Shown one piece after another: positions 3,707-44,700 of a stretch of 64,000 nucleotides of DNA. A model generated the notes under the pieces. The model was not told the DNA's origin, searched no databases, and saw only the letters and a list, made by a program, of their open reading frames with translations. The stretch's first letter is position 1. Each line of letters starts with the position of its first letter. Origin of the DNA: Phallusia mammillata (lineage: Eukaryota). Position numbers and translations under genes: made by a program. The stretch is taken from contig OZ281494.1 in NCBI GenBank assembly GCA_965637545.1, positions 13,206,001-13,270,000 on the forward strand. Reading direction: 5' to 3'.

Positions 3707-6700
3707 ATGGATATACACCAGCACAGATCACCGGCAATCGGCACAAACCCGATTCAAGCCTCGTTCTCGAACCACCAAACCTGCACTTTCTCAAGTGATT
3801 TCCAGAAAGCCAACTTTGCTAACCACCTAGAACTGTCTGTTCCTCCAAGCCAAGAAAATGCTAGAATTTCACAAACTGTTCGACAGCGACCGAGGAACCA
3901 GCAGGGTCAAATGCAAGCTGGAATGGCCAACAGTCACATGCAACCGACCTGCAATATTAACCAGAAAGTGATTCAGTACAACTTGCAGGTTAATAAAGTT
4001 TCCGCCATCCATGCACCAAATAACCAACCAACAACTTCCCGACATGGTTTATTTTCGAACACTTCAAGTACCCAGTACGGTGACCAACAGTTTTATGCAA
4101 ACCAGCAAGTGAATATGGTAAGTAACGAGCAACCACCCAGTACGCTAGGCACGGCTGATATTGAAATAGTCATAAATCAACTAACTGTAACACAGGGTTC
4201 AAATAACCGTTTTAACAACTTACAACAACATCAAAGAGCTGCACAACCGACCAATAACCAGTTTGTCAACATGCGAAACTCGAACAATCTGCATTTCACC
4301 AACCAGAGCCAAAACAACCAGCACCAGACAAACCATGGACCACCTCGTCAACACAGAACAATTGCAAGCTCCCATACTCCCGTAAGTTATTTCCAGTCCC
4401 AACCTCAAAACAACGCTAGAATGCCAATCAATCCCCAAAACAACCAGCAAGGTCAGGTTTCGCAATGGAATGAACATCAAGGATACAGCCGACAACACTC
4501 TCAAAGCAACCAGCTACTTCAAAACAATCCTGCAAACGTGAATTATTTACCTACCAGTGGTGGGGTTAGTTTACCACAACGCCATGTGATGAGCATGCAA
4601 GCCAACTACCAAACGAATGTACAGCAAAACTACACTCGACCAGTACGTCAGCAACTGCGAACTCATTTGACTCAACACCAGAATGTGAACGCAGAAATTC
4701 AAAAAGCCGGGCGGACTTTTTCCAACATTAAAACACCACCGCAGAATGTCAATCTTTTTTCAAACCCGAACCTACATACCAACCAGAGTCGACAAGCAGC
4801 CAATCAAACCTGTACAAAAGAAGACAAACAATCGTACAAACATTTAAGAGGTCAAAAGATAAAATCACCTGAACTCCGGCCGTTCGTGGATCTCAATAAA
4901 ATCACAAATGGTGAAAATATGGGACTTGCAAAAGATGATTCAACTGTGAGAGTCCCTATTTTATCACAACTTCTTCGCCAAATTAATCACGACGCCATGC
5001 AAAAAGGACCCAATGTACCTCTGAAGCCATTTGTTCCCAATCATGGATGTACGCCAAATAGTAACCAAGACAAGGTAAAAGAAGTTCAAAGTAACCAACC
5101 AACAACTGAAAGTTCTTCGGGAATACCTGGGTCCCAGGCGACGTACATTCCCCGCTTGCCCAAAACACCACGAGCATCTAAAATTATTCCACAACGTCGT
5201 CCTTCAAATAAGTTAGCAACACTTGAGTTGGCAAAAGAACATCAAATGAAACCTCAACAAGCACCAAGCGAGACCAACGCTCTCTTAACTCCAGGGCAAA
5301 TACAGGCTTTTGATCAATTGTTATATGGATCCAACAATACCCAACCCCGCCAGACTGGTTCGAACTCTCACATGTTACCTAATGGACAACACCAGTCACT
5401 AATAGCAACCAACCACTCCTTATCTGAGACTCATCAGCCCTCCGCAAGTTCCTGCAGGTCTCTCTTTGAACCTGATCCATCACCTACCAGATCGATACAT
5501 CACCAGTCACAAAATATAACCGACCACTCCCATACCGAAGCCCACCAGTCCACTGAAAGATCCTGGATGTCGATATTTGAACCTGACCTGTCACCAAGTG
5601 GACATCAGTCTTCCTTCGGGTCCAGTGACTCTTTGTTTGATGGATTGCCCTCTGGTCACGATCTTGGCCGTTCTGCTTCAGCCGATTGTCACTTGCCTCA
5701 GAAACATGGGTATAACTTTATTCGACCCCAGTCAGCCCCAAACGCCGACCCAATAACACCAATTACAAAACCACATCTTAAACCACCGACCTTGTCCAGT
5801 TTACCAACTGCTGACCAAACTTGTCCTGTGGCTGAACATGAGGATAGAAAATCGGTTCTGTTGTCTCGAATTCCAAAACTTTCACCACGATCAACATCTC
5901 CAGAAAACCAAAAAAATAGTGAAAATGCCAAAAGTTTGCAAGTGCCAAGTCTGATCAAAGTCGAGAAAAGTCCAGAAACAACAGGTGCTGAGGAAGATCC
6001 ACCGCTGATCAAAGTCGAGGAAAATCCAGAAACACCAGATGCTGAGGAAGATCCACCACTAATTGCAATCTCTGAAATATTTTCCTCCTACAAAAAGACG
6101 AAATCAGATGATGATGTGATATTTATTAAGGATTCCCCTCCAGCCAAGTCTAAGTCAGACGAGAAAATTATCAAACAAAAACCGCTGTCAGCTCGAAAGA
6201 TAAAAATGGAGCACCATGAAGTTATAGACTTGACATCCGATGACGAACACAGGCAAGATCACGAAACTAAAAGTGAGTCCCCTTCCAAAGCTGCTAAGAT
6301 CGTTTCTAAACCTTCAATGAAATCGCCTACAGCGGAAGAAGACCGCCTGAGGCTAATTCAGGATGATGTTGAAATTCTTCTTCAAATGGGAATCCCAAAA
6401 TATCGCCATCGCTCTATTAGGAATAAACGCCATAGAACAGATAACATGAACAGTTCGGAAGACGAGATTTCTGGGAAGAAAAGAAGATGTCACCAAACTA
6501 GGAAAAGTTCCAGTGAAGATCCTGTTATTCCAGATGCTCCACTGCCTTCTGAAATGAAAGAAGTCATTCCCGAATTGCCACAAAACATCCCTGGAAACTC
6601 CACGGAAACGAGTGCAGAGAACTCGCAACTAAAAAAACGAAGCAGACTGGCTATTCCAAAATCAAAACCTCCAAGAATGGACTTGGTTTATACTTATCAC

Positions 6701-6859
6701 CTTAAACGTTTACGTAGAAATGATGTTGGTGTCACTTCGTATTCTCCTCAATTTCTTGCAAAAAATGCGTCGATTCTTAAACGTACCAAGCGTTGCAAAG
6801 TTGTTCTTTCCGATATTTTCTCCATTAAGTCGTGCATTGATAAAGTAACGAAGTCGTGA
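3707..6859 (+). CDS. Single-exon 1050-aa Q/N-rich disordered protein, paralog 1 of a local unnamed family
   Basis: Uninterrupted 3.15 kb ORF in AT-rich DNA with an acceptor-like tttgatttcag at 3647-3657. Shared motifs: KSPELRPFVDL, DDVIFIKDSPP, EVIDLTSDDE, DDVEILLQMG, PRMDLVYTYHLKRL, CKVVLSDIF. Confidence 0.85.
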   Translation: MDIHQHRSPAIGTNPIQASFSNHQTCTFSSDFQKANFANHLELSVPPSQENARISQTVRQRPRNQQGQMQAGMANSHMQPTCNINQKVIQYNLQVNKVSAIHAPNNQPTTSRHGLFSNTSSTQYGDQQFYANQQVNMVSNEQPPSTLGTADIEIVINQLTVTQGSNNRFNNLQQHQRAAQPTNNQFVNMRNSNNLHFTNQSQNNQHQTNHGPPRQHRTIASSHTPVSYFQSQPQNNARMPINPQNNQQGQVSQWNEHQGYSRQHSQSNQLLQNNPANVNYLPTSGGVSLPQRHVMSMQANYQTNVQQNYTRPVRQQLRTHLTQHQNVNAEIQKAGRTFSNIKTPPQNVNLFSNPNLHTNQSRQAANQTCTKEDKQSYKHLRGQKIKSPELRPFVDLNKITNGENMGLAKDDSTVRVPILSQLLRQINHDAMQKGPNVPLKPFVPNHGCTPNSNQDKVKEVQSNQPTTESSSGIPGSQATYIPRLPKTPRASKIIPQRRPSNKLATLELAKEHQMKPQQAPSETNALLTPGQIQAFDQLLYGSNNTQPRQTGSNSHMLPNGQHQSLIATNHSLSETHQPSASSCRSLFEPDPSPTRSIHHQSQNITDHSHTEAHQSTERSWMSIFEPDLSPSGHQSSFGSSDSLFDGLPSGHDLGRSASADCHLPQKHGYNFIRPQSAPNADPITPITKPHLKPPTLSSLPTADQTCPVAEHEDRKSVLLSRIPKLSPRSTSPENQKNSENAKSLQVPSLIKVEKSPETTGAEEDPPLIKVEENPETPDAEEDPPLIAISEIFSSYKKTKSDDDVIFIKDSPPAKSKSDEKIIKQKPLSARKIKMEHHEVIDLTSDDEHRQDHETKSESPSKAAKIVSKPSMKSPTAEEDRLRLIQDDVEILLQMGIPKYRHRSIRNKRHRTDNMNSSEDEISGKKRRCHQTRKSSSEDPVIPDAPLPSEMKEVIPELPQNIPGNSTETSAENSQLKKRSRLAIPKSKPPRMDLVYTYHLKRLRRNDVGVTSYSPQFLAKNASILKRTKRCKVVLSDIFSIKSCIDKVTKS

Positions 6860-18636: not shown

Positions 18637-20188
18637 GTTTAGGACGAGAACACGCAGGGGTAAAAGGCCTAGTAGCATTGTAGGTACTGGAAACTAAAAT
18701 GTTGAATAAGTAATCCGTCCCCAATCCACCACACTACAATAACCATCAGAGCTACTGCTGGACCTGGAACCAATTCTTACCATGTTTTTGTTTGAACTGG
18801 GTCAACATCAGAAGCAAACATCGCCCTTTTCTCTTACATGGTTGTAAATAGCGAGGTTTACCTACTCCTGGCGCCAACATCGCTGTGGGGGGTCGACATT
18901 AACATAGCAAGTTGGCACAGGTTGATGGCCAAAAAAACATTTGGTAACAAAGTTACAGAAAACAGAAATGCTACCAACAAGCAGCTAACAATTAAAGTGG
19001 GTCAACGTACTGTGAATGTGAACTGTGAAGTCATGGCTATTGGTAAAAGGTTGTTTCTGGTCCACATAAAACAGCGTGTTTACAACGGGCACGAACGAGA
19101 TGACGTAACACAAGACTTCCTTCCTTTTTAACCAAACATAAACGCTTTCCGCAGGAACAGTAAAACAGTAGCTTATGTATTCTAATTCGTTTTTTTATTG
19201 TTCGCACGTTTGGCGATTATTCTTGTGTGTCCAGGTTTCTTCTTCACTTTGCCGTTGGTGTCTTGTTGCATAAAACTGCTTCTTTGGCGTCATGTGATTT
19301 CATGTGAGCGAATTGTGCCTTCTAAAAGCCTGTTGAAAATTTACCTGTGGCCAAGGTCTCTAAAAAGATTTGTTTGATAACTATAGTTTCTAGAAGTTTC
19401 TTTTGTGTTACCAGTTTTTGTGACACTATGTACAAAGTTGTTTTTTAGATTTTTTGTTTCAACAAATGAGGTGTCCGTATGAGCGTACTCCAGAATGTGA
19501 AAAAATACAATATATAATGTTCGTTTCACGCCCCTGTGCAAGACATCGGTGGCGAAATAGACATTGACAAATATTGCGTTTGTTGCGGGACAAATTATTA
19601 TTATAGGCTTATAACAAACGTATGTGCACCAGCTGTGGTGTTATTTTGGTAATCACATAAACAATTGCACCCGATAATTATGCAAGATGTTGTTCTAATG
19701 TTAGTTAATCTGACCAGGAAAGCTATTTAGTGACCCGAATATTTGCCAAATAGCAAAACATGACCTATCGTTTCGTGTGTACAATCATTAACCACATAGC
19801 TGGGGTATCTAGCCCAAGTTCTAACTTTGGGATTCCATGTTTGTTTGCCATGTTTAAAGCAAATGGTGTAAAATACATGTAAAACTGATTCTGCACTTCT
19901 GTCTTATCCCACTGACGGTGATTGCAGAATTACTTGTCCTGCGTTAACCAAACAAAGACTTGACCTGTCATAACTAAAGTTGTGTATGCACAATACACAT
20001 AGACGAATATGGAATGTATTTATGGCGATGGCAGTAGAAAAAATGGCCCATCACGACTTCGTTACTTTATCAAAGAACAACTTAGCAGCGTTTGGTACGT
20101 TTGAGAATCGACGCATTGTTTGCAATAAATTGAGGGGAATACTAAGTGACACCAACATCATTTCTGCGTAAACGTTTTAGGTGATAAG

Positions 20189-20907
20189 TAGGGCAAATAT
20201 TTTTTGACTTGTCAAAAAAAGTCAAAATTTTGTCAAAATTTTTAGAATAGGTCAAAAATTGTCAAAATTGTTTACAAAGTCAAAATTTTTTACAAAGTTA
20301 AAATTGTTTACAAACTGCATTGTCGTGGTGTTGTAGAGGTTGCACTGCCAGCAAACTATTCGTTTTACACCTTGTAGCCTACTTTATACTGTTGTAATTG
20401 GCCCATTGCCCCAATTATTGCGAATCATAAACCATCAAGTGAGTGAAACAATTAGGTTGATATGGCGTGATGCTCAACACACCTCAAAACGTGCAAAATT
20501 TTGGTAGGTCCCAATTCATTTTACGGTAGCTGCAGGTTAGGTGCAGCTCTTGCTTCGGTTTTGCTTTAGATACTTCATGTATCTTTCGTTTATACAAATG
20601 TATTGAATAATTTTCGTTGTGTCTTAGCTGCAGTTTTTTGGCAGTGATTTTTAATCAGCTCATTCCCTTTTCAGAATAGGTTAGGTCTATGTTCAGATTT
20701 TTGCCCTTCTCTTAGACTTTTGCACATTCTTTCGCTCTAGTTAGATTAGCCTACAGCCATATTTTAACTTTTCGTACAATAATGCGTCATTTAACCACTT
20801 GAATTCTTCATAGGTCAAAATTTTGTCAAAAAAAGTTTTTTAAAGTCAAAATTTTCAATTTGTGGGTCAAAATTTGTCGTTTTTTAGGTCAAAAAATAAT
20901 CGCCCTA
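20189..20907. mobile_element. Non-autonomous hAT element (Ac-type TSD)
   Basis: TIR tagggcaaatattttttgac / gtcaaaaaataatcgcccta; TSD gtgataag (nTnnnnAn); many gtcaaaattt subterminal repeats. There is a possible frameshifted transposase relic LRCVEHH..INLIV on the minus strand near 20450-20495. Confidence 0.85.
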
Positions 20908-21578
20908 GTGATAAGTATAAACCAATTCCATTCTTGGAGGTTTTGATTTTGGAATAGTCAGTCTGCTTCGTTTTTTTAATTTGCGAGTTCTCTACACTCG
21001 TTTCCTTGGGGTTTCCAGGGATGTTCTTTGGGGATTCGGGATTGACTTCTTTCTTTTCAGAATGCAGTGGAGCATCTGAAATAACAGGATCTTCACTGGA
21101 ACAGGACGAAATCATTTTCCTAATTTGGTGACGTCTTCTTTTCTTCCAAGAAATCTCGTCTTCCGAAATGTTCATGTCATCTATTCTATGGCGTTTATTT
21201 CTAAATGAGCGATGGCGATAATTTGGGATTCCCATTAGAAGAAGAGTTTCAACATCATCTTGAATTAGCCTCATGCGGTATTCTTCCGCTGTAGGCGATT
21301 TCTTTGAATGTTCAGAAACGATCTTAGCAGCCTTGGAAGGGGAGTCACTTTTAGTTTGATGATCTTGCTTGTGTTCGTCATCGGATGTCAAGTCAATAAC
21401 TTCATGGTGCTCCATTTTTATCTTTCGGACTTACAGCAGTTTTTGTTTGATAATTTTCTCATCTGACTGAGACTTGGTGCCACAAATTAACTTGTTTAGT
21501 GCTTTGAAACCTAGACATCTTATGACGTAACAATGCTTCTGATAGTTTCAATCATCACGCCTTGTGTTTGAACTAGAG

Positions 21579-29256: not shown

Positions 29257-31578
29257 ATGAATGATAACCAGAAGCCAATATTGCACCGAAAAGGCATATC
29301 ACTCGGAAGTTGTGTAAAAGGAAAAACACCTTTGTTACAAAATCAAAAACGTGTTTGTGCATCTGCTCCAAGTACAGTACAACAACAAACGAGTACCACA
29401 AAAAATCTAAGCCCACCTCCTTCGTACGAATCGTCAGTGGGTACGAATAATCCGGTTCTTAATTTATCCAACAAGGCATCTCAAATGAGTTTCAGCAAAC
29501 AAGTTTTTCAGTGCAATATTAATATAAACGCTCTTCCCTATATGGATGTTTCGGCACCAGGTACTACGCAAACTAACAGCAACCGGGCAACTGTGCACCA
29601 TAGCGGCAACCAACACGACAACAACAGGATTATTGCACCAGGCAGCCAAGTGTTGAATTCATGGCATGGGCTGACGTATGACAGCAACGGAAAATTGATC
29701 CATCCGAGTTTACTACCTCAGCGAACGGGCTATGTTAGCTCTTTCACTTCCCGGCCGAGACATAATATCCCGCCGACCTCAAAACCCAGTACTGTTGTAA
29801 ACCAAAGTATACCTTCGTTTGACCAGACTTACTTCTACCACCCATCATCGATGGCCAATCAGACAAACTCTGTTAGTTTGGTAAGAAATCTCAATTCCAC
29901 ATCAGTCCCACTGACACCTAATTTCAACAACTTGCAAGTTTGTCCTTATCAGCCGAGGCGATCCAATGCATGTTCAAACAATCCACAATCGAGTAGTGGC
30001 CCGAAACAAAGTGCACCTCGCCAGGCTCAGGCTCCTGTATGTAGCACACCAACTCCTGTAACGATGGTACAACTGCGCCGACTCGATACAACGAGTGTCC
30101 TTGCACAATCTAACAGATACAATCATCAAACTGCGACAGTTTCGACCACCGGGCAACGGATTAACACGAAAAACTGTAGGGTGCAGTATGTTGCTGCAGT
30201 GGATGTTCAAACCAGTTCGCAATCAAAGCAATCAACCATTCCACAGGCACCACACCATGATGACCAATCTCAACTAGTGCTATATTCGAAACAGACGCAG
30301 TTGCAACATCGACCGCTACAAATTCAACGAAATATTCGAGTTCGACAACCTCAAATAAATCGTGCGGGGCAGCAACATCGCACGCCACTAATTTCGGAAC
30401 AGCAAAAATGTCCAACGTTCTACCCACAGGATCAACCAAAGTTTAAACCACCACAAAGGGTTCCTGCAGAAAACCCGGCAAAGTCTCACGACTGCAATAA
30501 TTCTGGATTACAAAACAGTGAATCACCTCAAAGTCGAGATTCTTCACCAACATTGTCTCTAGAACAAAACCTAGATGATGTAACTGCAGAACGAGGCAGA
30601 CGAAAAGGTAAGCTCCCTCTTGTAACATTTGTCGAGTCAAAATCGATTGGCGACGCGGAAAAAAGTTCAACAGCGTCCGAGTCTCCGTCGGTACTTAGTG
30701 AAGATTCAAGTCAAAGCGATTTGCAAGTGCTGTCTGTTTACTCTGTGCAGAATCAAGACTCTTCAAGCAAAAATAAAATGCAAGAAACAAAGGAGCAGAG
30801 TGCTTTAAAGTCAGCCGTTGACAAGTTTGCGAACAATTTACCCACGAACATTACAAAAGAACAAATTGACACCATCGTTGAAAAACTTCAGACAAGCAAT
30901 TATAGTTGCAAAACAGTGGAAACGATAATAGAGATGTTGCAAAGCCATCAGACAAGGAAAAGAACCGTTTCGATGACAAGTGCACAAGATGTCAGTCCGT
31001 CTTCAAAAGCAAACAAACTTTTAACTCCGTCCAAATGGCGAGCGAAAACGAGATTGACAAATAAAGTTGCGAGAGAGGAAAACAATGAAGATGTGAAAAA
31101 TGTACAAAAAGCTGCTAAGGAACTTTTGAACTTGGGGATGCCTACCAGTGAAAATTACAAGGTGGCATTTGAAAGAATGAAAAGGAGAAGAAAGGCGACT
31201 GAGAATAAAGATCAGAGAATTCCACTCGTGCACAACATTAAAGAAGAACCAGTAGATTTTCCAATTGAAAACAATGAACTTACTGACGAAGATGCAGTAA
31301 TTGTGTCAAGATTTAGTACAAAGCGGAAGGCAAGAATTACATGCGGATTACCTCACAAACAACTGCGCTTTGATCATGTGTACAAAAGTCATCTTAAACG
31401 GTTACATGAGGTGCAAGAAATTTCTCCACATTTGCTCACTCAGCTTCAAAATTCGGACAGATTTCAGGTAAAATTAGAGCGCGTTCCCTCGGACATATTG
31501 TGTAAAAAGAGTTCTGTAAATATAGTTGATATTTTTGATCGACGTCAAACCGCCGAGCTTGTAACATGTAAAAAATGA
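29257..31578 (+). CDS. Single-exon 773-aa Q/S/T-rich disordered protein, paralog 2
   Basis: Uninterrupted ORF preceded by ttttgcag (~29231-29238). Motifs: KLPLVTF, KELLNLGMP, IKEEP, LRFDHVYKSHLKRL, FQVKLERV, VNIVDIF. Confidence 0.8.
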   Translation: MNDNQKPILHRKGISLGSCVKGKTPLLQNQKRVCASAPSTVQQQTSTTKNLSPPPSYESSVGTNNPVLNLSNKASQMSFSKQVFQCNININALPYMDVSAPGTTQTNSNRATVHHSGNQHDNNRIIAPGSQVLNSWHGLTYDSNGKLIHPSLLPQRTGYVSSFTSRPRHNIPPTSKPSTVVNQSIPSFDQTYFYHPSSMANQTNSVSLVRNLNSTSVPLTPNFNNLQVCPYQPRRSNACSNNPQSSSGPKQSAPRQAQAPVCSTPTPVTMVQLRRLDTTSVLAQSNRYNHQTATVSTTGQRINTKNCRVQYVAAVDVQTSSQSKQSTIPQAPHHDDQSQLVLYSKQTQLQHRPLQIQRNIRVRQPQINRAGQQHRTPLISEQQKCPTFYPQDQPKFKPPQRVPAENPAKSHDCNNSGLQNSESPQSRDSSPTLSLEQNLDDVTAERGRRKGKLPLVTFVESKSIGDAEKSSTASESPSVLSEDSSQSDLQVLSVYSVQNQDSSSKNKMQETKEQSALKSAVDKFANNLPTNITKEQIDTIVEKLQTSNYSCKTVETIIEMLQSHQTRKRTVSMTSAQDVSPSSKANKLLTPSKWRAKTRLTNKVAREENNEDVKNVQKAAKELLNLGMPTSENYKVAFERMKRRRKATENKDQRIPLVHNIKEEPVDFPIENNELTDEDAVIVSRFSTKRKARITCGLPHKQLRFDHVYKSHLKRLHEVQEISPHLLTQLQNSDRFQVKLERVPSDILCKKSSVNIVDIFDRRQTAELVTCKK

Positions 31579-32337: not shown

Positions 32338-32630
32338 TCGGTGATAGCTGCACATAGGGAATAATTAATACATCCCGTTAGTCAGCAAATTGGAGACTTG
32401 TTTCTTTCACGACGTGCAATCCTGTATGTAACCAAAGACTACACTTAGCAGTCAATTTTATGACAGCAATTTAGAAAATGTACCTTACACTTCTTTTTTC
32501 TCCTTTCAGCCTACATTAAGAAGCTGTTTCCCGGCGGCGATTTATCCAGTTTCATAAATAACGCATAAACGATAAAATGGTATTTATTTTTTGAACGAAA
32601 CATCACACATAAGGAATAGGCATAGAAAAA

Positions 32631-35279
32631 TCAATGAAGAACAACAGGTTTGTTAAGTTTATCTTTAAAATCGTTAGTATTTTTACGAGCGTTTGCAAGA
32701 TGATAACTGTAAACCAAATCCATCCTCGGTGATTTTGCTCTGGCCATTGTCAATCTAGCTTGAGCTTTCGATCGTTTTCGGTTCACTGACGGGGTTTTAT
32801 GACCCAATTTGTCTTGAAGTGATTGCAATTCGTAATTGTTCAAACATAAGTCTGAGGTAGCCTTTATCTTTTCTTGGTGTTGCGAAAAATCTTGGGGGAG
32901 AATGTCTTTATCGGAACAGGGTAAAATCCTTTTCTCATCGTATGCGCAACGTCCGTTTTTTACTCGGATCAAATCTTCATCAGTTGCCGAAACCCTCATG
33001 CTCTTCTCCCGACGTTTTCTCTTGGAACTGGTTTCACCGTGGTAATTTACAGCTCCCATTCGAAGAAGAGCTTCAACTTCCTCATGGATGTTCAATAGAC
33101 GATCTTTATCACTGACAAATGATTTCCTTGAACATCTCTCAATCGTGTTGCCCTCAGGGTAACAAGAAGCAGGTCCTTGGTGTTGATCATTATTTATGTT
33201 TTCATCTTTGGATGTCAAATCGACAAAGTGAAGTTTCTCCTTTTTTATCTTTCTTCTTAACGGTAAGGATCTAAGCTTCGTCACTGCTTGAAGAGGGCTG
33301 TTCGAAGGAGGTGAATCCTCGATACATAACACGCCGGGAACTTCTTCTGGCAAATCATTGTTATCACTATGTAAAGTTTGAGAAGTAGCGACGAAGGGCA
33401 ATTTTTCGTCCACATTTTGTGTTTCCAACTTCGTTTTAACGTTGACAACTTTGTCAGGACTTTGAACTGGTTGAAGATTTTCTAAAGGTGATTTGACTTC
33501 TTTGGTGGATATTTGTTGTTCGGTAAATGATTGTGCCAGTGAAAATATCCTATTGTGGGTATCTGTTGTCATTTCTTCTGGGCAGTCTGACTGGGACGGC
33601 AATAATGGGATAATGGGGTTAACTGGTGTGACTGGAACACTAGGACCTGTAGTTGAAACAATGTTGTTTTCAGGTTGTTCGGAATTGCGATTGTCGGGTG
33701 AAGAAAACGGCGAAGGTGGTGGACAATGAGATGCATGTAACTCCTTTTTCTGGATTCTAACGGTGACAGATGTGGTCCAAAGGGGATAAACAACGCATTC
33801 GTGTTGTTGTTCGTGGCGTTTCGACGACTGGTCATCAGTTGACACGTCGGGTTCCTGCTGTGATTCTTGCTTTTCTGTTGTCTGGGTTAGTCTTGAAGGT
33901 GACACGTGAGACCAAAAGGTCGAATCAGTAGGAGTCAGCTTTGACTCTTGCATATTTAGTGACTGATTGGGGTCCAAATGTGACAGGTGAGATCCAGAGT
34001 TGCACACATCGGGCTCCATTTGTAACTTGGGGTTTTCAGGTGATTGGGTGGGACCCAGCGGTGACAGTGCAGCAGTTCCAGTGGTTGGTTCAAGGGACCT
34101 TTTATTTAATCCATGTATTTTCTCGGGTGACAAGTATGGCCGTGAAGGTGACTGATGGGATCCAGTAGTTGGTTCGCTGTATGCTTGCTTTGGCTCGAGT
34201 TGAAACTGGAATGTCTGGCTTGGAGTATAATTTGTTGCAGTCGATTGCGTCAAGGGTACGGCTTGATATTCATGGCCGGATTGAAAGTGCATGGATGGCT
34301 TTTGCAGACGTGACGTGTTGGGTCCATCGACAGTTGTCATATAAAGATTATTTGGTTGTGGGGTATTTTGCGGATTCGGGGATACGTAGGGTACCTGGTT
34401 ATGGCCTTTACTGGAACCACATGCAAAATGCCCAAACAGCTTTAGTTGATGACTCCCTTCATAGCTGTTGCTGTCCGATTGTTTCTCTTTTATCTCGTGT
34501 ATGATTTGTCCAAAACGGTTGGTCTCTTGTTCATCAGAGTCAGTGTTGACAATTGGGCTTTTATTGCTTTGGTTTTTCACTTTGCTAAAGTCAACAAACG
34601 GTCGAAGCTGAGGTGACTTTCGTCCAAGGTCAGCGTTTGTCTCATGTTTTAGCAACAACTGTGAATCACCCCTTGTTTTATGTGATATTGTTTGATTGAC
34701 TGCTGCTTTATGGCAAACTGACATATCGTCGCCAGAGTTGGGAAACGGAATGGTGTTCTGCTTTTGGGAATGTAAGTTGGCAAGCATTTGTTGCAATGAT
34801 GCAAGTCTTGCTACCTCCTGAACTAGACCCAAATTGTTTTGATTGCCTTTGTATTTCTGTAAAGGAACTGCTTGTTTTTGTTTGTTGTTTACTTGACGAT
34901 TGGCCTGCTTCTTTGCCTTCATCTGTAAAGAATCTGGTTGTTTTTGTTGGATCTTTGTTTGACCATTTATCTGTACATTTGCTGGTATTTTTGAAGGAAC
35001 TGATTGATTTTGTTTGGCATTTTCTTGACCAATGACCTGCATATATGCCGACATCTGTAAAGGAACTGATTGGTTTCGTTCGGTGTTTGCTTGGCCATTG
35101 ACCTGCAAATTTGCTTGCATTGCTTGTATGTGACTGATCCCACTTTGTCCCCATTTTTTGTTTGGCACAATTCTAGTAGTTTGGTTGTAGCTATTCGAAG
35201 AAATTCCGATGCGTTGATGTTGGCCATGTAAAGAATCATCCTGGTCATTGGCACGACTATTTTGGTTCGTCCGAAGCAT
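32631..35279 (-). CDS. Single-exon 882-aa Q/N-rich disordered protein, paralog 3
   Basis: Uninterrupted ORF with motifs KSPQLRPFVDF, GVLCIEDSPP, HFVDLTSKDE, EEVEALLRMG, PRMDLVYSYHL. These are collinear with paralog 1. Confidence 0.85.
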   Translation of the reverse strand: MLRTNQNSRANDQDDSLHGQHQRIGISSNSYNQTTRIVPNKKWGQSGISHIQAMQANLQVNGQANTERNQSVPLQMSAYMQVIGQENAKQNQSVPSKIPANVQINGQTKIQQKQPDSLQMKAKKQANRQVNNKQKQAVPLQKYKGNQNNLGLVQEVARLASLQQMLANLHSQKQNTIPFPNSGDDMSVCHKAAVNQTISHKTRGDSQLLLKHETNADLGRKSPQLRPFVDFSKVKNQSNKSPIVNTDSDEQETNRFGQIIHEIKEKQSDSNSYEGSHQLKLFGHFACGSSKGHNQVPYVSPNPQNTPQPNNLYMTTVDGPNTSRLQKPSMHFQSGHEYQAVPLTQSTATNYTPSQTFQFQLEPKQAYSEPTTGSHQSPSRPYLSPEKIHGLNKRSLEPTTGTAALSPLGPTQSPENPKLQMEPDVCNSGSHLSHLDPNQSLNMQESKLTPTDSTFWSHVSPSRLTQTTEKQESQQEPDVSTDDQSSKRHEQQHECVVYPLWTTSVTVRIQKKELHASHCPPPSPFSSPDNRNSEQPENNIVSTTGPSVPVTPVNPIIPLLPSQSDCPEEMTTDTHNRIFSLAQSFTEQQISTKEVKSPLENLQPVQSPDKVVNVKTKLETQNVDEKLPFVATSQTLHSDNNDLPEEVPGVLCIEDSPPSNSPLQAVTKLRSLPLRRKIKKEKLHFVDLTSKDENINNDQHQGPASCYPEGNTIERCSRKSFVSDKDRLLNIHEEVEALLRMGAVNYHGETSSKRKRREKSMRVSATDEDLIRVKNGRCAYDEKRILPCSDKDILPQDFSQHQEKIKATSDLCLNNYELQSLQDKLGHKTPSVNRKRSKAQARLTMARAKSPRMDLVYSYHLANARKNTNDFKDKLNKPVVLH
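34857..35120 (-). repeat. Four degenerate 66-bp (22-aa) tandem repeats in paralog 3
   Basis: MQANLQVNGQANTERNQSVPLQ / MSAYMQVIGQENAKQNQSVPSK / IPANVQINGQTKIQQKQPDSLQ / MKAKKQANRQVNNKQKQAVPLQ. Confidence 0.8.
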
Positions 35280-36654: not shown

Positions 36655-38307
36655 CGAGAAAGAGGAACTAATCACGTTTCTGCCTTAGGTCGCTTTGTCT
36701 AAGCTTGCGGTAAATTGTTAAACCAAACTTATTTACAGCCGCACTGGTTTCAAGCCGTGTATCTTAATTCTTTTGGCAAAGCTGCTTTCCATTTCAAATA
36801 CTTTTTCGTTTGGTTTCTGTGTAAAAAACGCTCAAAACATGGTTTCCACTTGTGTATGACAAAATCCGTTTGAAATGCGAATCTTTACAGCTCTTTACAC
36901 TCTCCTATTCCGGATGCTTTAACAACGTTCACGTTTTTTCGTTACAAGTGCTATTTTGTTCTTGACTGATTACACGAACCTCACATGCTATGTTTGTATT
37001 TCTTCAGTCGCTTGAAGTACAGACAGAAGAAAAAACACAATCGAGAGAAAATTTGCGTTTTTCTTTTGCTATCGGCTGGAAACCATTTAAGCGTATCCAT
37101 TGAAGTTGGAAAAAAGAGTCCTTGCTATCGATAAAATTATACGTCCAACTCATTTGTATTTCTAATCCAAAACCGCAGATAAATTAATCGCATTTAAGGA
37201 GAAAGACATTATAAATCATTATCATGGCTGATAATTTGTTATCGTGGCACTGGTTTTGATAAATATAGCTCAATAAATAGAACGCTAAGTGCAATGGTGG
37301 TCCGAAAAATCACCTTTCGTGCCCTTTATTGACACGCAGGTGACTTTCAATAATCCATACAGGCGAGACCTGACCCTCCCACACCGGAAACCAACGCCGT
37401 GCCCGCAGCTTTATGAATAACCGCCCTCATTGTAGCTGGTTTAACTCCTAAGTATGCCTGTCTATCTAAGATTATTTTCGAAGCCTTTAGGCACATCTAC
37501 ATAATTCCGTTGAAGCATAACAAATATTGTGGAGGCCCTGGCAAAAACACTAAGCAAATATGGACGGTACTCAGAAAACGTCCAGACTGTAACAGCGTTG
37601 ACAAACTGGACGGATTTGTACGTAAGCTTTCACACACACCAAAGTGAAACGGTGAGGGTTTAATCCTCAACACAGGCAAACAGGGAAGGGAGCATATCTC
37701 ACAGACATTTTGTTGTAACTCATCAGGCATTGGTACAATTAATAAAATATTTACATGAAATCTAAAGCTTACAAACTTCAATGGTACTTACAGTCCTACA
37801 TAGAGTGAGTATGCCCGAAGACATCTACGTTTTGCGGTTCCACTTTAAACCAAGTAATCACTAAAACACCATTTGATTACGGAATTCATCCGGAGGCTTA
37901 CTTCGGTTAAAGCAATTAACGTGTCTCGCAGCAATTACCTAAAATGCGCATTTTTCGTGCTGAAACTGGCCTGGGTTGATTTTATTTGTGTAAATAGAAT
38001 CAAGTCAGGGTAAAAGCACCACATGGTCTGAGTTGTATAGTTAGAATAGCGCGATTGTGGCCAAGGTAACAGTTGCGTGGATTTCATTGAGATACGTTTT
38101 TAAATCAGAAATGTAGAAACAACAGCTTGAATGTTTTGACGATTTCAGTGTTAATACTCAGACGTAGGTAGAAACAACATATTTGCCAGAAGAAAGCTGT
38201 TGAGTTTCTGCCTGGAAGCAAAAGTTTATACATGCTGCAACAACGTTTTTTTTTCTTTTAGGCCAATTATACTTACGAAGTGATTGGGTTATTTAAGTAC
38301 ATACAAA

Positions 38308-39615
38308 ATGTTTTCTGGTGGCAAAAATACTCAGCAATGTTCCAATACACCTTTCGTTTATTCACCCGACTGCGAAACTTTTCATGGCATAATCAGGAAC
38401 TCCAACAGGCACCAAGTTCCACATGTGAAGTCTGGCAGTTTGTTGAACGCTGATCAGTTACATAACAACATCCATGACAACATTACAACTATGCAACATA
38501 CTGTGCATCCAAGAGCTCTGCAAAACGACAAGGGTTGCTACAATCTACAAACTTGCCATTACAATCTAAACACCATGTACTGCGGGAAGCAGAGTTATGA
38601 CAGTTATCAACGTTACGAAAGGTTTCTTCGGCCAACATATGCAAACTACCAACAGCGCTTGGTCACACCATTCTATCCAGTCTATCAATATGGGCAACCT
38701 TTTAGGTTTCGTATTCAGCTTCCAACCCAGGTAAACAGATCATGGCAGCCAACAACAAGTTTTAACCATGGTGCGCCATATAAGCCAAATGTGTTGCCAA
38801 AGACAAAACACAAAGTTGAAGACATCGGAATAGTCTCATGTCAGTCTCTTGAAGATCACTATTACGTGGCAGGTGCGGGTGTTGAGGATAAGGTTGTCAG
38901 CCCACAGCCCTTCGTCAAGTTAAGAAAAAGTTTAAATCAATCTACAAAAGAGTTTGATGACAGAACGAACACCGTTGATGACATAAAAATAGTTTCCTAT
39001 CAGTCTCTTGCACATATTAATAACGACGTGTCTAACAAAAGGAAGTACAGAAACATAAAACCAAAAATGTACTCGCACTTTACGAACGCTGCATTGAAGA
39101 TTGGATACAAGCCAACCGTAGATTTACCCCGAACATCCGTTGATCACTCTTTTACTGGTACAAAATGCACAAAGACTTTCAAGGGTAAGCCCACTTGCCG
39201 CGACAAAATTACAGTTACCAAAAAACGGAAACCTGCATCTTCTGAATTGAAAGCCGAAATTTTGTCCAAGAATTTTTCAAAGCAGCAACAAGAAGCATCA
39301 ATTTGCAGTTTAAATTTTTCTACATCGCATCAAATGATTCAGCCCTCTATCAAAATTTCGGGCCACACAGAAAGAGCCAAGACAGTTGAAAAGAAGCGCA
39401 AAAATGTCCGAATGAAAATTGGAAAGACGTTTAAGTACCCCCGGCCTGATCGACTGTATAACCTAAACCTGCGGAATTTGCGCAAGACCGAGATAAAGCC
39501 ATCCTACCAACCGCTAAAGTTTAGACTTAAATCGTGTAAAGTTGTGTTGGAAAAAACTATTACGATTTTCAGTCTTCATCAAATTCGTGTTAAATTAGTT
39601 GACATTTTTCGGTGA
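38308..39615 (+). CDS. Single-exon ~435-aa protein, paralog 4 (shortest and most divergent)
   Basis: First ATG at 38308 (the ORF track opens at TTG 38284), after a ttttcttttag acceptor. Motifs: SPQPFVKL, DDIKIVSYQSL, PRPDRLYNLNLRNL, CKVVLEK, IRVKLVDIF. Confidence 0.75.
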   Translation: MFSGGKNTQQCSNTPFVYSPDCETFHGIIRNSNRHQVPHVKSGSLLNADQLHNNIHDNITTMQHTVHPRALQNDKGCYNLQTCHYNLNTMYCGKQSYDSYQRYERFLRPTYANYQQRLVTPFYPVYQYGQPFRFRIQLPTQVNRSWQPTTSFNHGAPYKPNVLPKTKHKVEDIGIVSCQSLEDHYYVAGAGVEDKVVSPQPFVKLRKSLNQSTKEFDDRTNTVDDIKIVSYQSLAHINNDVSNKRKYRNIKPKMYSHFTNAALKIGYKPTVDLPRTSVDHSFTGTKCTKTFKGKPTCRDKITVTKKRKPASSELKAEILSKNFSKQQQEASICSLNFSTSHQMIQPSIKISGHTERAKTVEKKRKNVRMKIGKTFKYPRPDRLYNLNLRNLRKTEIKPSYQPLKFRLKSCKVVLEKTITIFSLHQIRVKLVDIFR

Positions 39616-41758: not shown

Positions 41759-44700
41759 TCATGTTTCTCCCATTAAAATTCCTAAAGCTTTTTCCTGGTT
41801 TCTGTCTGTCAGCAGCAACGCCTCCTTAATCTTGTCAGTGGAGAAACCCATGTCGATGAATTGTCTCTCCAACTGCAAATATTTCACGGCCTGCAAACAA
41901 GTGTAAAATTGATGTATAAAGTAGAAACCTGTCATAAAGAATTATCCATAAAACATATGTTGTTTCAAACTTTGCTAGTATGTCTGCATGTAATCTGCTG
42001 TTATAATATGTAAACCTCCATGTCAACCTGGTTCACGCTATATAGTTTTTGCATTCATAAGGACAGCGATGACTGGTTAAATTTTATGTTGTACATTTAG
42101 ATAGAATTTTTATTTTTATACACTGGTGCATACAACAGTTTTATCAGTTCTTGTCAGCATGGAAATGACTTCCAGTTAGGATAACATACACAAGTCAGTA
42201 CTATATAAATATTTAGCCCAACAAACCTCTTGTTCATTTCCGTTAAATATGTCAAGTGCTTCTTCAATATTTTTAATTTCAAAGTGGTGATCAACCAAAC
42301 GTTGGAGAATGACTAAATGCTCTATGACCTAAAAGAAATAAGGACAAATTAAAAAGTATTGTTGCTTTTTCACGAAAAGACACAAAAGAATGACATAACC
42401 TAAGCAGCCTTACTCTATATAGCTATAACATGGAGGCGCATATATGATTCACAAAAACATTGTAGAGACTTCAAAGACATGAAAGTTTTACACTACACAA
42501 ATGTCCAATGAATCATTTGTTGGTGACACATACCAGAGTTAATTTTGCAGAGGCTTACTAAATGCAGTTTATGCACGTTGCACTTTCCAGAACTAGTTTG
42601 GACACATTCCACATTAATACATGAGTGAAACACCCATTACATTTACAAACAGCTGTTATGTGTTAATGTGGTCTAATGGGGGTATTAACCATGCTGTATG
42701 GATTACTGAAAATGGTGTAAAGGGTATTTACAAATATTGCTCTCGGACATGTTCATCTGCTACATCAAATATTCTGCGTAAGGGAAATTGTAAATTCCTC
42801 GTTTGTATTTAATATTGAGCTGTGTTAGATATGGCATTTCCTTTTAACTAACGCAATCAATACTGATAATGGCATTTATTAATGCACAAAATAATTCTCA
42901 AAACAAGATCTTTGAAATATATTGATTCACTGGCAATATTCAGTCAAATTCAAAGCAAAATCTACTCTTACATCTTTTTGGTCAGTTCCATATTTCTGCA
43001 TGGTCCTTATCACATCTTGTTCCTTGAAACCCATAGAGATAAGAGATTTGGCAAAATCCCTTTCATCTTGACCTAATCCACTCAGTAAACCAGGACTCTG
43101 AAACACATTCCCGAAGTTTTAAAAACATACATCTAGTGTTTTACAAGCTTAATAAACGCTATTCACATTTTCACTCATAATTAATTCACCACTTACCAGT
43201 GGTTGGGGATGTGGAGATTTTGGTTTTATTTGCTGCAAAAACAAATATAAATTGTTGTTCTACAAATAATGTTACCACAGAAATACTCAACACGACACAT
43301 TAAAAACACTAACTTCAACTTCTGCAAGCATAAAGTAAAGCATTTCTAAATAATGGTCAAATTAACAGTTGTTCAGTTGGTGGACTATTGAAAAAACTTT
43401 GTGAAATGCATTTTGATGGAATTAACTGGTCAAACATATATATATATATATAGAATAGAATAGAAGCAAAAAAAACAACAACAACAACATGAGCATGCAT
43501 CTATGATAAATATGGATGAGTTTCATGTAGCTTGTGTAATACAGTATCATGCAAATCTACCTCACTGAGTGTTTGTTGGTCAGTAACATCCTGCTGTCAA
43601 TAAACATAACATTATAAGCACAAGTCTACAGTTTTCAGCACGATATTCTAACTTGTCTAAATAAGAGAGAGTGCAAAAAAAGAGAAAAACTAAACATCCA
43701 TTTTTGCCACCAAATTAGCGCAAGCCCCAAAAGAATGGCTGGCCATGCAAAACTAGATGGATAACTTACTGGTAGTGGCTTATAAGTTTTATTTGGCAGT
43801 TGAGGCAAACTTGTCAGTGCTTTGTTGATGGTATCCTCAAATTTTGCACGTTCTGATGCAGACTTATTGGCTAGTACCTTGGATTTGACAGCACCATATG
43901 AATTAGGGTTGAGTTCAGGCGTAGGGGATTTATTATCTTCATTGTTGTTTCGCTTCCGTACCACCACCCTTGGTTTAACTGGTGGTATGTTACTTGGTAT
44001 GTTTTCATAAACATTTTGAGTAACATTTGTTTGTGAGTTTGCAGGAACAGTTTGGCTGCTGCTGACGTCAGTTCGTCGTTGACCACCAGCATTTATTTCA
44101 TATATGTCAGTAAATGAAGAACTGTTTGCGGGGGAAAGTCTTGGTGATGCAGCACGAGCAGACATTGCTGGTGGAGAGGTTATGGGAGGCAAAAATCCTG
44201 GGGGGTTTTGTGATGGAAAATACTGAGGTTGAATATTTTTGACTTTTTTGTTCCTTGGTTTGGCTGCAGGTATAGGTTTCGTTGGTTGAGAAACTCCATC
44301 TGCAGCCTCTGCATCGTCAGTCAGAAGATCAGTTAGTTGATCTATTAGAATTGACTTCTTGGCACGTTCACTGTTCTGGGGCTCATTGTGCACACCATTT
44401 ACTGGGGCAATTATTTCAGAGTTATTTTCACCAATAGATGTCACCACTTCTTCTGGACTTTGTTTTCCACCTTAAATGCATAATTATTTATGTGTTGAAA
44501 CTAAGAGAATATTGCACTATGACCTTTATTTTTGTAGTTTAATTTTAACAGAAAATTGGATATATTAAAAAATTTTTTTTAATTCACAGCGTTTGTATAA
44601 CTTACTGTTTGATGACACAATTTGTAAAACATCTTTTAGCTCTTGGATATCATCAATTGTTTTTAACTCCATATCACTAAATGGGTCTGGAGCTTCTGTT

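What the first reader, a model, noticed from the sequence alone, without database searches (positions are those of the whole stretch)
6671..6820. Undescribed conserved C-terminal box PRxDxxYxxHLxxL ... VxLxDIF
Paralog 1 PRMDLVYTYHLKRL...CKVVLSDIF. Paralog 3 PRMDLVYSYHLANA...KPVVLH. Paralog 2 LRFDHVYKSHLKRL...FQVKLERV...VNIVDIF. Paralog 4 PRPDRLYNLNLRNL...CKVVLEK...IRVKLVDIF. This is the strongest family signature and matches no motif I know. It is probably a short helical docking element for an unknown partner, followed by a second xxVxL (HP1-type degenerate) site.
Basis: seen in the sequence. Interest (0 to 1): 0.7.

Follow-up and report, generated by a model that had tools for sequence, protein, structure and literature searches.

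The report
Conserved C-terminal helix box, orphan family
Four neighbouring, mostly disordered sister proteins, plus their one detectable relative in another organism, keep the same two-part peptide signature at the C-terminal end; it matches no annotated domain and is most likely a small helical docking site for a partner not yet identified.

Summary
Window 6671-6820 encodes P989-F1038 of a 1050-aa ORF (P1). Three tandem paralogs (P2, P3, P4) carry the same tail.

- Box A is K-x-[PL]-R-x-D-x-[VL]-Y-x-x-[HN]-[LV]-x-x-[LA]-[RH], preceded by a basic cluster. It is present in 5 of 5 sequences.
- Box B is V-x-[LIV]-x-D-I-F, present in 4 of 5. P3 lacks it.
- All six paralog tail pairs beat composition-matched shuffles (p 7e-9 to 2e-3).
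- A profile search of 1.84 billion representatives found one relative. It comes from metagenome contigs of another organism and keeps both boxes.
- There was no Pfam or PDB match. No further copy lies in the 240-Mb genome, apart from a decayed duplicate whose box A is split by an insertion and whose box B is deleted.
- AlphaFold2 gives box A as an isolated 17-residue helix (pLDDT about 80), with no compact fold around it. The variable positions line one stripe of that helix.

The partner is unknown. The "second HP1-type xxVxL site" is not supported: there is no strict PxVxL, and the conserved unit is VxΦxDIF.

This is a real, lineage-restricted, undescribed motif of modest interest. Earlier notes of this scan cover the same stretch and other motifs of the same proteins.

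The parts
3707..6859 (+). Paralog P1, a 1050-aa uninterrupted ORF with a Q/N-rich disordered N-terminal part; it carries the finding at its C-terminus.
   Evidence: no Pfam family
6632..6649 (+). P1 basic, NLS-like cluster K976-K-R-S-R980-L. R980 is invariant and is followed by L, I or M in all five sequences.
6665..6715 (+). P1 box A, K987-PPRMDLVYTYHLKRL-R1003. The predicted helix starts at M991.
6800..6820 (+). P1 box B, V1032-VLSDI-F1038.
6839..6853 (+). P1 tail D-K-V-T-K. It matches ELVTC in P2 and ETVTK in the outside relative. Conservation is weak.
31357..31407 (+). P2 box A, KQLRFDHVYKSHLKRLH (ORF 29257-31578).
31516..31536 (+). P2 box B, VNIVDIF. An upstream box-B-like element, QVKLERVPSDIL, precedes it.
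32685..32735 (-). P3 box A, KSPRMDLVYSYHLANAR (ORF 32631-35279, minus strand). There is no box B; the ORF ends KPVVLH-stop 17 residues later.
39433..39483 (+). P4 box A, KYPRPDRLYNLNLRNLR (ORF 38284-39615).
39589..39609 (+). P4 box B, VKLVDIF, one residue before the stop. An upstream box-B-like element, CKVVLEKTITIF, precedes it.
20010..21421 (-). Decayed inverted duplicate of the 3' third of P1, 92.6% nucleotide identity. It has a frameshift, stop codons, a 727-bp insertion that splits box A between the codons matching P1 6690 and 6691, and a 29-bp deletion that removes box B.

Best explanation
The stretch encodes the C-terminal targeting module of a small, lineage-restricted family of long, intrinsically disordered, probably nuclear proteins.

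The module has three parts:
1. A basic, NLS-like cluster ending in an invariant R followed by L, I or M.
2. Box A (K-x-P-R-x-D-x-V-Y-x-x-H-L-x-x-L-R). The proline-arginine caps a 17-residue alpha-helix. About two thirds of the helix surface is constrained (D, V, Y, H, L, L, R), and one stripe is free to vary.
3. After a variable linker of 0-45 residues, box B (V-x-hydrophobic-x-D-I-F), a short hydrophobic peg.

My reading is that box A folds on binding into a groove of a folded partner protein and that box B adds a second contact. The module would thereby anchor the rest of the protein, which carries SUMO-binding-type motifs upstream, to that partner or to its nuclear site.

Shown: the motif, its statistical significance, its retention despite saturated synonymous change, its uniqueness in the genome, its presence in a second organism, and the helix prediction. 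Inferred: nuclear localisation, binding-coupled folding, and the existence of a partner. Unknown: the partner's identity.
For: - Box A is in 5 of 5 sequences and box B in 4 of 5.
- Tail alignments are significant against shuffles.
- In a profile search of 1.84e9 representatives, the single hit aligns through the C-terminal region (profile positions 545-717) and keeps both boxes (E 3e-8). The same gene occurs on three independent metagenome contigs.
- Synonymous sites in box A are saturated (pS 0.66-1.28 in 9 of 10 pairs) while pN is 0.21-0.49. The constraint is therefore on the peptide, not the DNA.
- The one neutral copy has lost both boxes.
- The box A core, searched as a DNA pattern, gives 12 genome hits against 8 for the reversed control. 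Only P1, P3 and P4 lie in open frames.
- AlphaFold2 gives box A as a helix at pLDDT about 80, with nothing packed around it (pTM 0.22 and 0.16).
- Variable positions 5, 8, 9, 12 and 16 fall in a 40-140 degree arc of the helical wheel.
- K-[KR]-x-[KR]-type clusters lie directly upstream in 4 of 5 sequences.
Against: - No partner was identified and no binding test could be run.
- The Eisenberg hydrophobic moment of box A is not above shuffles in 3 of 5 sequences, so it is not a classic amphipathic helix.
- The AlphaFold2 runs used only a 5-sequence alignment. Confidence drops to 65-70 in the longer construct, and box B has pLDDT about 57.
- P3 lacks box B, so box B is dispensable in at least one intact-looking paralog.
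- Only two organisms are represented, so constraint is measured on few lineages.
- Expression was not checked here.
Confidence: 0.5

Rival explanations
1. The basic cluster plus box A is mainly a nuclear-import or chromatin/nucleic-acid-binding element. It could be a bipartite NLS read by importin-alpha, or a basic helix that lies on DNA or on the nucleosome. On this reading it is not a docking site for a dedicated partner.
For: Three of the six invariant residues are basic (R980, K987, R990). Further R, K or H occur at helix positions 12-16. K-[KR]-x-[KR] clusters lie upstream in 4 of 5 sequences. The hydrophobic moment is weak.
Against: The invariant D992 and Y995 and the conserved H998, L999 and L1002 are not what an NLS or a DNA-binding basic stretch needs. 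Box B is hydrophobic and acidic. The spacing between the two basic groups (6-7 residues) is shorter than the 10-12 of classical bipartite signals; that figure is from my own knowledge and was not tested.
Confidence: 0.2
2. Box B, and the box-B-like elements of P2 and P4, is a known strand-type motif. The candidates are a SUMO-interacting motif (as in the VVLSD-type C-terminal SIM of Daxx), the degenerate HP1 chromoshadow site proposed by the first reader, or a non-canonical PCNA-binding box.
For: The loose psi-x-psi-psi core followed by D fits P2 (VNIVD) and P4 (VKLVD). P1's VVLSD resembles acidic/serine-flanked SIMs. Degenerate [PLVCFI]-x-V-x-[LMVI] is present in P1, P2 and P4. All four box B copies fit the loose h-x-x-h-[FY] pattern.
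Against: Strict PxVxL matches none. The canonical PIP box (Q at position 1, aromatic pair) matches none. The invariant I-F after the D belongs to none of these motifs. P3 lacks the element. No binding test was possible.
Confidence: 0.15
3. The module mediates self-association, either homo-oligomers or hetero-oligomers among the four paralogs. This would turn a multivalent SUMO-binding protein into a scaffold.
For: Only the general logic of multivalent nuclear-body scaffolds, plus the co-retention of the same tail in four co-located paralogs.
Against: A 17-residue helix with a weak hydrophobic moment is short for a coiled coil. The monomer models show no packing. The homodimer prediction gave no answer, which counts neither way.
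Confidence: 0.08
4. [quoted passage not shown]
For: The spacing D-x-x-Y-x-x-H-L-x-x-L-R parallels the MIM1 consensus (D/E)-x-x-L-x-x-R-L-x-x-L-(K/R). I recall that consensus from the CHMP1/CHMP2-VPS4 structures. MIM1 is described as a helical motif binding the MIT domain in PMC11218997 and PMC7240154. The genome has several MIT-domain genes.
Against: The strict consensus matches none of the five sequences. The relaxed pattern that matches all five was written to fit them. Y replaces L and H or N replaces the key R. The box is not at the extreme C-terminus, and the proteins look nuclear. No test was run.
Confidence: 0.04
5. The similarity is a chance or compositional artefact among unrelated ORFs.
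For: The proteins are low-complexity and the motif was found by eye.
Against: It is significant against shuffles, collinear in all sequences, retained in a second organism and unique in the genome.
Confidence: 0.01

Closest known systems
Helical short linear motifs / molecular recognition features at the ends of disordered proteins (e.g. MIM1 of ESCRT-III, Sin3-interaction domains)
   Same: An isolated helix of about 17 residues in a disordered context, with conservation confined to one broad face. It is proline-capped, near the C-terminus, and flanked by basic residues.
   Different: The residue pattern fits none of the consensus patterns I tested. The partner is unknown. A second hydrophobic box follows after a variable linker.
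HP1 chromoshadow-binding PxVxL motif
   Different: There is no P or conserved hydrophobic residue at -2. The string is not conserved in P3 or the outside relative. The conserved extension D-I-F is foreign to the HP1 motif.
SUMO-interacting motifs with acidic/serine flank (Daxx- and PIAS-type)
   Same: A hydrophobic core of three or four residues followed by D or S-D, in a protein that has VIDLT-type motifs upstream.
   Different: The hydrophobic I-F follows directly, with no acidic run. Pattern matches are inconsistent among the five sequences.
Pfam DUF4683 (NEXMIF family), DUF4553 and PWWP2A clusters (ESM Atlas leads)
   Same: Long, disordered proteins of chordates. They were the nearest clusters by language-model features (0.75-0.77).
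   Different: The scores are in the range shuffled proteins reach. There is no Pfam hit in any paralog. The only weak DUF4683 signal in the genome lies on another contig.

Membership tests
Any annotated protein domain (Pfam-A) or solved structure (PDB) | Significant match of a family HMM, or of the box profile, to an annotated family or chain | tested here: not met
   Pfam: no family at E<=1 on full proteins and none relevant at E<=10 on the five C-terminal segments. PDB profile search: 0 hits at E<=10.
HP1 chromoshadow-binding PxVxL motif | P (or hydrophobic) at -2, V at 0, L/M/V at +2, kept across the family | tested here: not met
   The strict pattern is absent from all five tails. The degenerate pattern is found only in P1, P2 and P4. 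The aligned -2 position of box B is K, S, R or S.
HP1 chromoshadow-binding PxVxL motif | Binding to the chromoshadow dimer | not testable with these tools
The genome's chromoshadow domain is split over two exons.
SUMO-interacting motif | psi-psi-x-psi or psi-x-psi-psi core with an acidic or phosphorylatable flank | tested here: inconclusive
   The loose core is present in P2 (VNIV) and P4 (VKLV). The ELM-style parallel pattern matches only P2 box B and a different site in P4. P1 and the outside relative fail. No single-exon SUMO domain was found for a complex test: the only full-length single-exon match to the SUMO-like family (PF11976) reads as NEDD8.
PCNA-interacting PIP box | Q-x-x-[ILM]-x-x-[FY]-[FY] | tested here: not met
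   There is no Q at position 1 and I-F replaces the aromatic pair. Only a loose h-x-x-h-[FY] pattern fits.
MIM1 (MIT-interacting motif type 1) | (D/E)-x-x-L-x-x-R-L-x-x-L-(K/R) helix at the extreme C-terminus | tested here: not met
   The strict pattern is absent from all five sequences. The box lies 17-58 residues from the end. The consensus is from memory. The MIT domains of the genome are split by introns, so binding was not tested.
Classical monopartite NLS | K-[KR]-x-[KR] cluster | tested here: met
   Present directly upstream of box A in P1, P3, P4 and the outside relative. P2 has KRKAR, which misses the literal pattern. Function was not tested.

The most novel reading that the evidence does not exclude
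Box A plus box B is a previously undescribed bipartite docking motif (a capped helix plus a V-x-hydrophobic-x-D-I-F peg) read by a dedicated folded partner. It would tether a family of SUMO- and possibly HP1-binding disordered scaffolds to a specific nuclear structure. That would define a lineage-specific recognition pair rather than a variant of any catalogued motif.
Probability: 0.3. Interest if true: 0.5.

Novelty: new member of a known kind. Interest (0 to 1): 0.27.

Why it matters
The box is the one handle on an otherwise featureless orphan family. It is short enough to synthesise as bait and is conserved between two organisms, so a pull-down could name the partner and, through it, the pathway these SUMO-motif-bearing proteins serve.

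Beyond that the result is ordinary. Conserved terminal helices in fast-evolving disordered proteins are common. Nothing here points to new chemistry or to a long-standing open question.

Tried and rejected
- **Word-index protein searches.** P1 residues 780-1050 and P3 residues 620-882 found nothing. The outside relative as query found only near-identical variants of itself.
- **Exact look-ups.** P1 and P2 are not on record.
- **Agd3_C Pfam hit.** The hit on the outside relative lies in a tandem Pro/Thr/Ser repeat at residues 120-182. It is unrelated to the box and was discarded.
- **ESM Atlas.** The best scores were 0.75-0.77 (PWWP2A-like, DUF4553, DUF4683), which is noise level. DUF4683 is not detectable in the cluster.
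- **Metagenome scans.** A 3-sequence alignment found only the same outside gene again.
- **Homodimer prediction of the 97-residue tail.** No answer (score 0.00). This is not evidence either way.
- **Complex tests with candidate partners.** Tests with the HP1 chromoshadow domain, an MIT domain or SUMO were not run. In this genome these domains are split by introns, and the only single-exon ubiquitin-like hit is NEDD8.
- **Fold search.** Not attempted, because the models have pTM 0.16-0.22 and would give meaningless matches.
- **Literature.** A search for ascidian plus SUMO-interacting motif gave nothing relevant. No paper giving the literal MIM1 consensus was found in the two papers read, so that consensus rests on memory.
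- **Organism identity.** I did not verify the identity of the organism of the window or of the outside contigs. 'Ascidian' comes from earlier notes only.
Full report
**What is there**

The window is AT-rich (about 38% G+C). It lies in a 240-Mb genome at G000:C1:13206001-13270000. It holds four long uninterrupted ORFs:
- P1: 3707-6859 (+), 1050 aa
- P2: 29257-31578 (+), 773 aa
- P3: 32631-35279 (-), 882 aa
- P4: 38284-39615 (+), 443 aa. Its listed start is TTG, so its true start is uncertain.

The finding, 6671-6820, translates exactly to P989-F1038 of P1 (PRMDLVYTYHLKRL...CKVVLSDIF). The strings quoted for the other three ORFs are present as written. None of the four proteins matches a Pfam family at E<=1. 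Earlier notes of this scan call the organism an ascidian and the proteins expressed. I did not verify either point.

**Is it more than chance?**

Yes.
- In the full-length alignment, 6 of the 11 invariant columns sit within 20 residues of box A: R980, K987, R990, D992, Y995, L999.
- The best-scoring 12-column conservation windows of the C-terminal alignment all fall on box A.
- Local alignments of the tails exceed 3000 composition-preserving shuffles for all six paralog pairs, with Gumbel p from 7e-9 (P1-P3) to 2e-3 (P2-P3).
- A six-frame search of the whole genome with the tail profile returns only the four ORFs and a broken duplicate of P1.
- A degenerate DNA pattern for the core P-R-x-D-x-[VL]-Y-x-x-[HN]-[LV] gives 12 genome hits against 8 for the reversed control. 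Only P1, P3 and P4 lie in open frames. P2 has L in place of P, so the pattern does not cover it. The other nine hits are interrupted by stops or lie in short frames.

**Relatives elsewhere**

Two word-index searches found nothing. Because the claim rests on absence of relatives, I ran the exhaustive profile search with the four-protein alignment. It returned one hit among 1.84 billion representatives: P0001, 442 aa, E 3.3e-8. The hit aligns through the C-terminal region, profile positions 545-717.

P0001 reads ...VKKRRNARISITSTYKKPRLDLVYLGHVQNLR...LCKPSSVTICDIFSNHAVSETVTKLVIH. It therefore keeps the basic cluster, box A, box B and the VTK tail.

It is the second ORF (probably the second exon) of a Q-rich gene on a 17.9-kb metagenome contig of higher G+C, 41-47%. 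The same gene recurs on two further metagenome contigs. Only near-identical variants of it exist in the 90% clusters. The tail downstream of box A in P2 aligns with that of P0001 at p 2e-6.

The family is thus known from two organisms only.

**Anatomy of the module**

1. A basic cluster: KKRSR, KRKAR, RKRSKAQAR, KKRKNVR or KKRRNAR. It ends in an invariant R followed by L, I or M.
2. Six or seven residues later comes box A: K-x-[PL]-R-x-D-x-[VL]-Y-x-x-[HN]-[LV]-x-x-[LA]-[RH]. It occurs exactly once per protein.
3. A linker of variable length.
4. Box B: V-x-[LIV]-x-D-I-F in P1, P2, P4 and P0001.
5. A weak [DE]-x-V-T-[KC] tail in P1, P2 and P0001.

P2 and P4 carry an extra box-B-like element upstream (QVKLERVPSDIL and CKVVLEKTITIF). 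P1 has a single element. P3 stops 17 residues after box A with KPVVLH and has no DIF.

**Constraint acts on the peptide**

Over the 17 box A codons, the synonymous proportion is saturated (pS 0.66-1.28 in nine of ten pairs). The non-synonymous proportion is 0.21-0.49. The sample is small, so this is qualitative.

The inverted duplicate of P1's 3' third serves as a natural neutral control. It is 92.6% identical to P1 and carries a frameshift and stop codons. A 727-bp insertion splits box A, and a 29-bp deletion removes box B.

**Structure**

AlphaFold2 on the five-sequence tail alignment gives a helix over M991-V1007 with pLDDT about 80. The other segments are low-confidence and pTM is 0.22.

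In a 175-residue construct the helix recurs at pLDDT 65-70. A second helix covers the upstream block EEDRLRLIQDDVEILLQMG (pLDDT about 80). The two helices do not pack (pTM 0.16).

On a helical wheel the variable positions (5, 8, 9, 12, 16 of the 18-residue box) occupy a 40-140 degree arc and the conserved positions fill the rest. This is the pattern expected for a helix buried deeply in a groove. The Eisenberg hydrophobic moment is not above shuffles in three of the five sequences, so I do not call it a classic amphipathic helix.

**Comparison with known motifs**

- Strict PxVxL: none.
- Degenerate HP1 pattern: P1, P2 and P4 only.
- ELM-style SIM: P2 box B and an unrelated site in P4.
- Canonical PIP, APIM, CtBP, RVxF, LxxLL and eIF4E motifs: none.
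- Strict MIM1: none. A relaxed MIM1-like pattern fits all five sequences, but I wrote it to fit them.

The PDB profile search gave no hit at E<=10. Pfam on the five tails gave nothing relevant. ESM Atlas neighbours scored 0.75-0.77, which is within the noise range. The suggested DUF4683 is not detectable in the cluster.

**What could not be tested**

The genome's HP1 chromoshadow domain, MIT domains and SUMO are split across exons. The only single-exon ubiquitin-like hit is NEDD8. The one complex job, a homodimer of the tail, returned no answer and is not used as evidence.

**Verdict**

A short helical element that matches nothing annotated is supported. The HP1-type reading of the second site is not supported: the conserved unit there is VxΦxDIF.

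The most likely function is a bipartite docking or targeting module next to a nuclear-import signal, with the partner unknown. I put this at about 0.5. The main rival is an import or chromatin-binding basic helix. Smaller possibilities are that box B is a SIM-, HP1- or PCNA-type strand, that the tail self-associates, or that box A is MIM1-like.

It is a real, undescribed, lineage-restricted motif. It is useful as bait but not surprising in kind.

Noticed in passing
window 32600-32660 (- strand), end of P3: P3 ends ...KPVVLH-stop. Shifted one base into the next frame from inside the H codon, the DNA reads IDFSMPIPYV-stop. The nucleotides GTTGTTCTT...GAT.TTTTCT parallel P1's GTTGTTCTTTCCGATATTTTCTCC (VVLSDIFS). 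A one-base indel, or an assembly error, may therefore have cut off a former box B. The protein-level alignment of the two tails is not significant (p 0.29).
   Followed up: partly
window 20191-20917 (- strand): A 727-bp insertion sits inside the box A codons of the decayed P1 duplicate. It looks like a small transposable element. Its family was not examined.
   Followed up: no
window 6332-6400 (P1) and the aligned blocks in P2, P3 and P0001: A second conserved block, [DE]-x-x-R-L-x-x-[IV]-x-x-x-V-x-x-L-L-x-x-G, is predicted as a confident helix (pLDDT about 80). It is kept in the outside relative (EEERLVRVRNEVAEILNAGK). It is absent or unrecognisable in P4.
   Followed up: partly
L017 7537-9417 and 9602-10960: The outside relative appears to be a two-exon gene with a Q-rich first exon. 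It lacks obvious VIDLT-type motifs. It carries a tandem GGDPTTxSLxIPVSLPLEKTTTSP repeat whose copy number varies between contigs (442 against 472 aa). That repeat causes a spurious Pfam Agd3_C hit.
   Followed up: partly
G000:C5:27674536-27674748 (L026 1501-1713): A single-exon ORF encodes a protein that reads as NEDD8 (MLIKVKTLTGKEIEIDIE...LRGG). It was found while looking for SUMO.
   Followed up: no
window 43635-44447 (- strand): A 270-aa ORF, Pro/Ser-rich, with a hydrophobic C-terminal segment. It is possibly an exon of a membrane-anchored protein. It was not examined.
   Followed up: no
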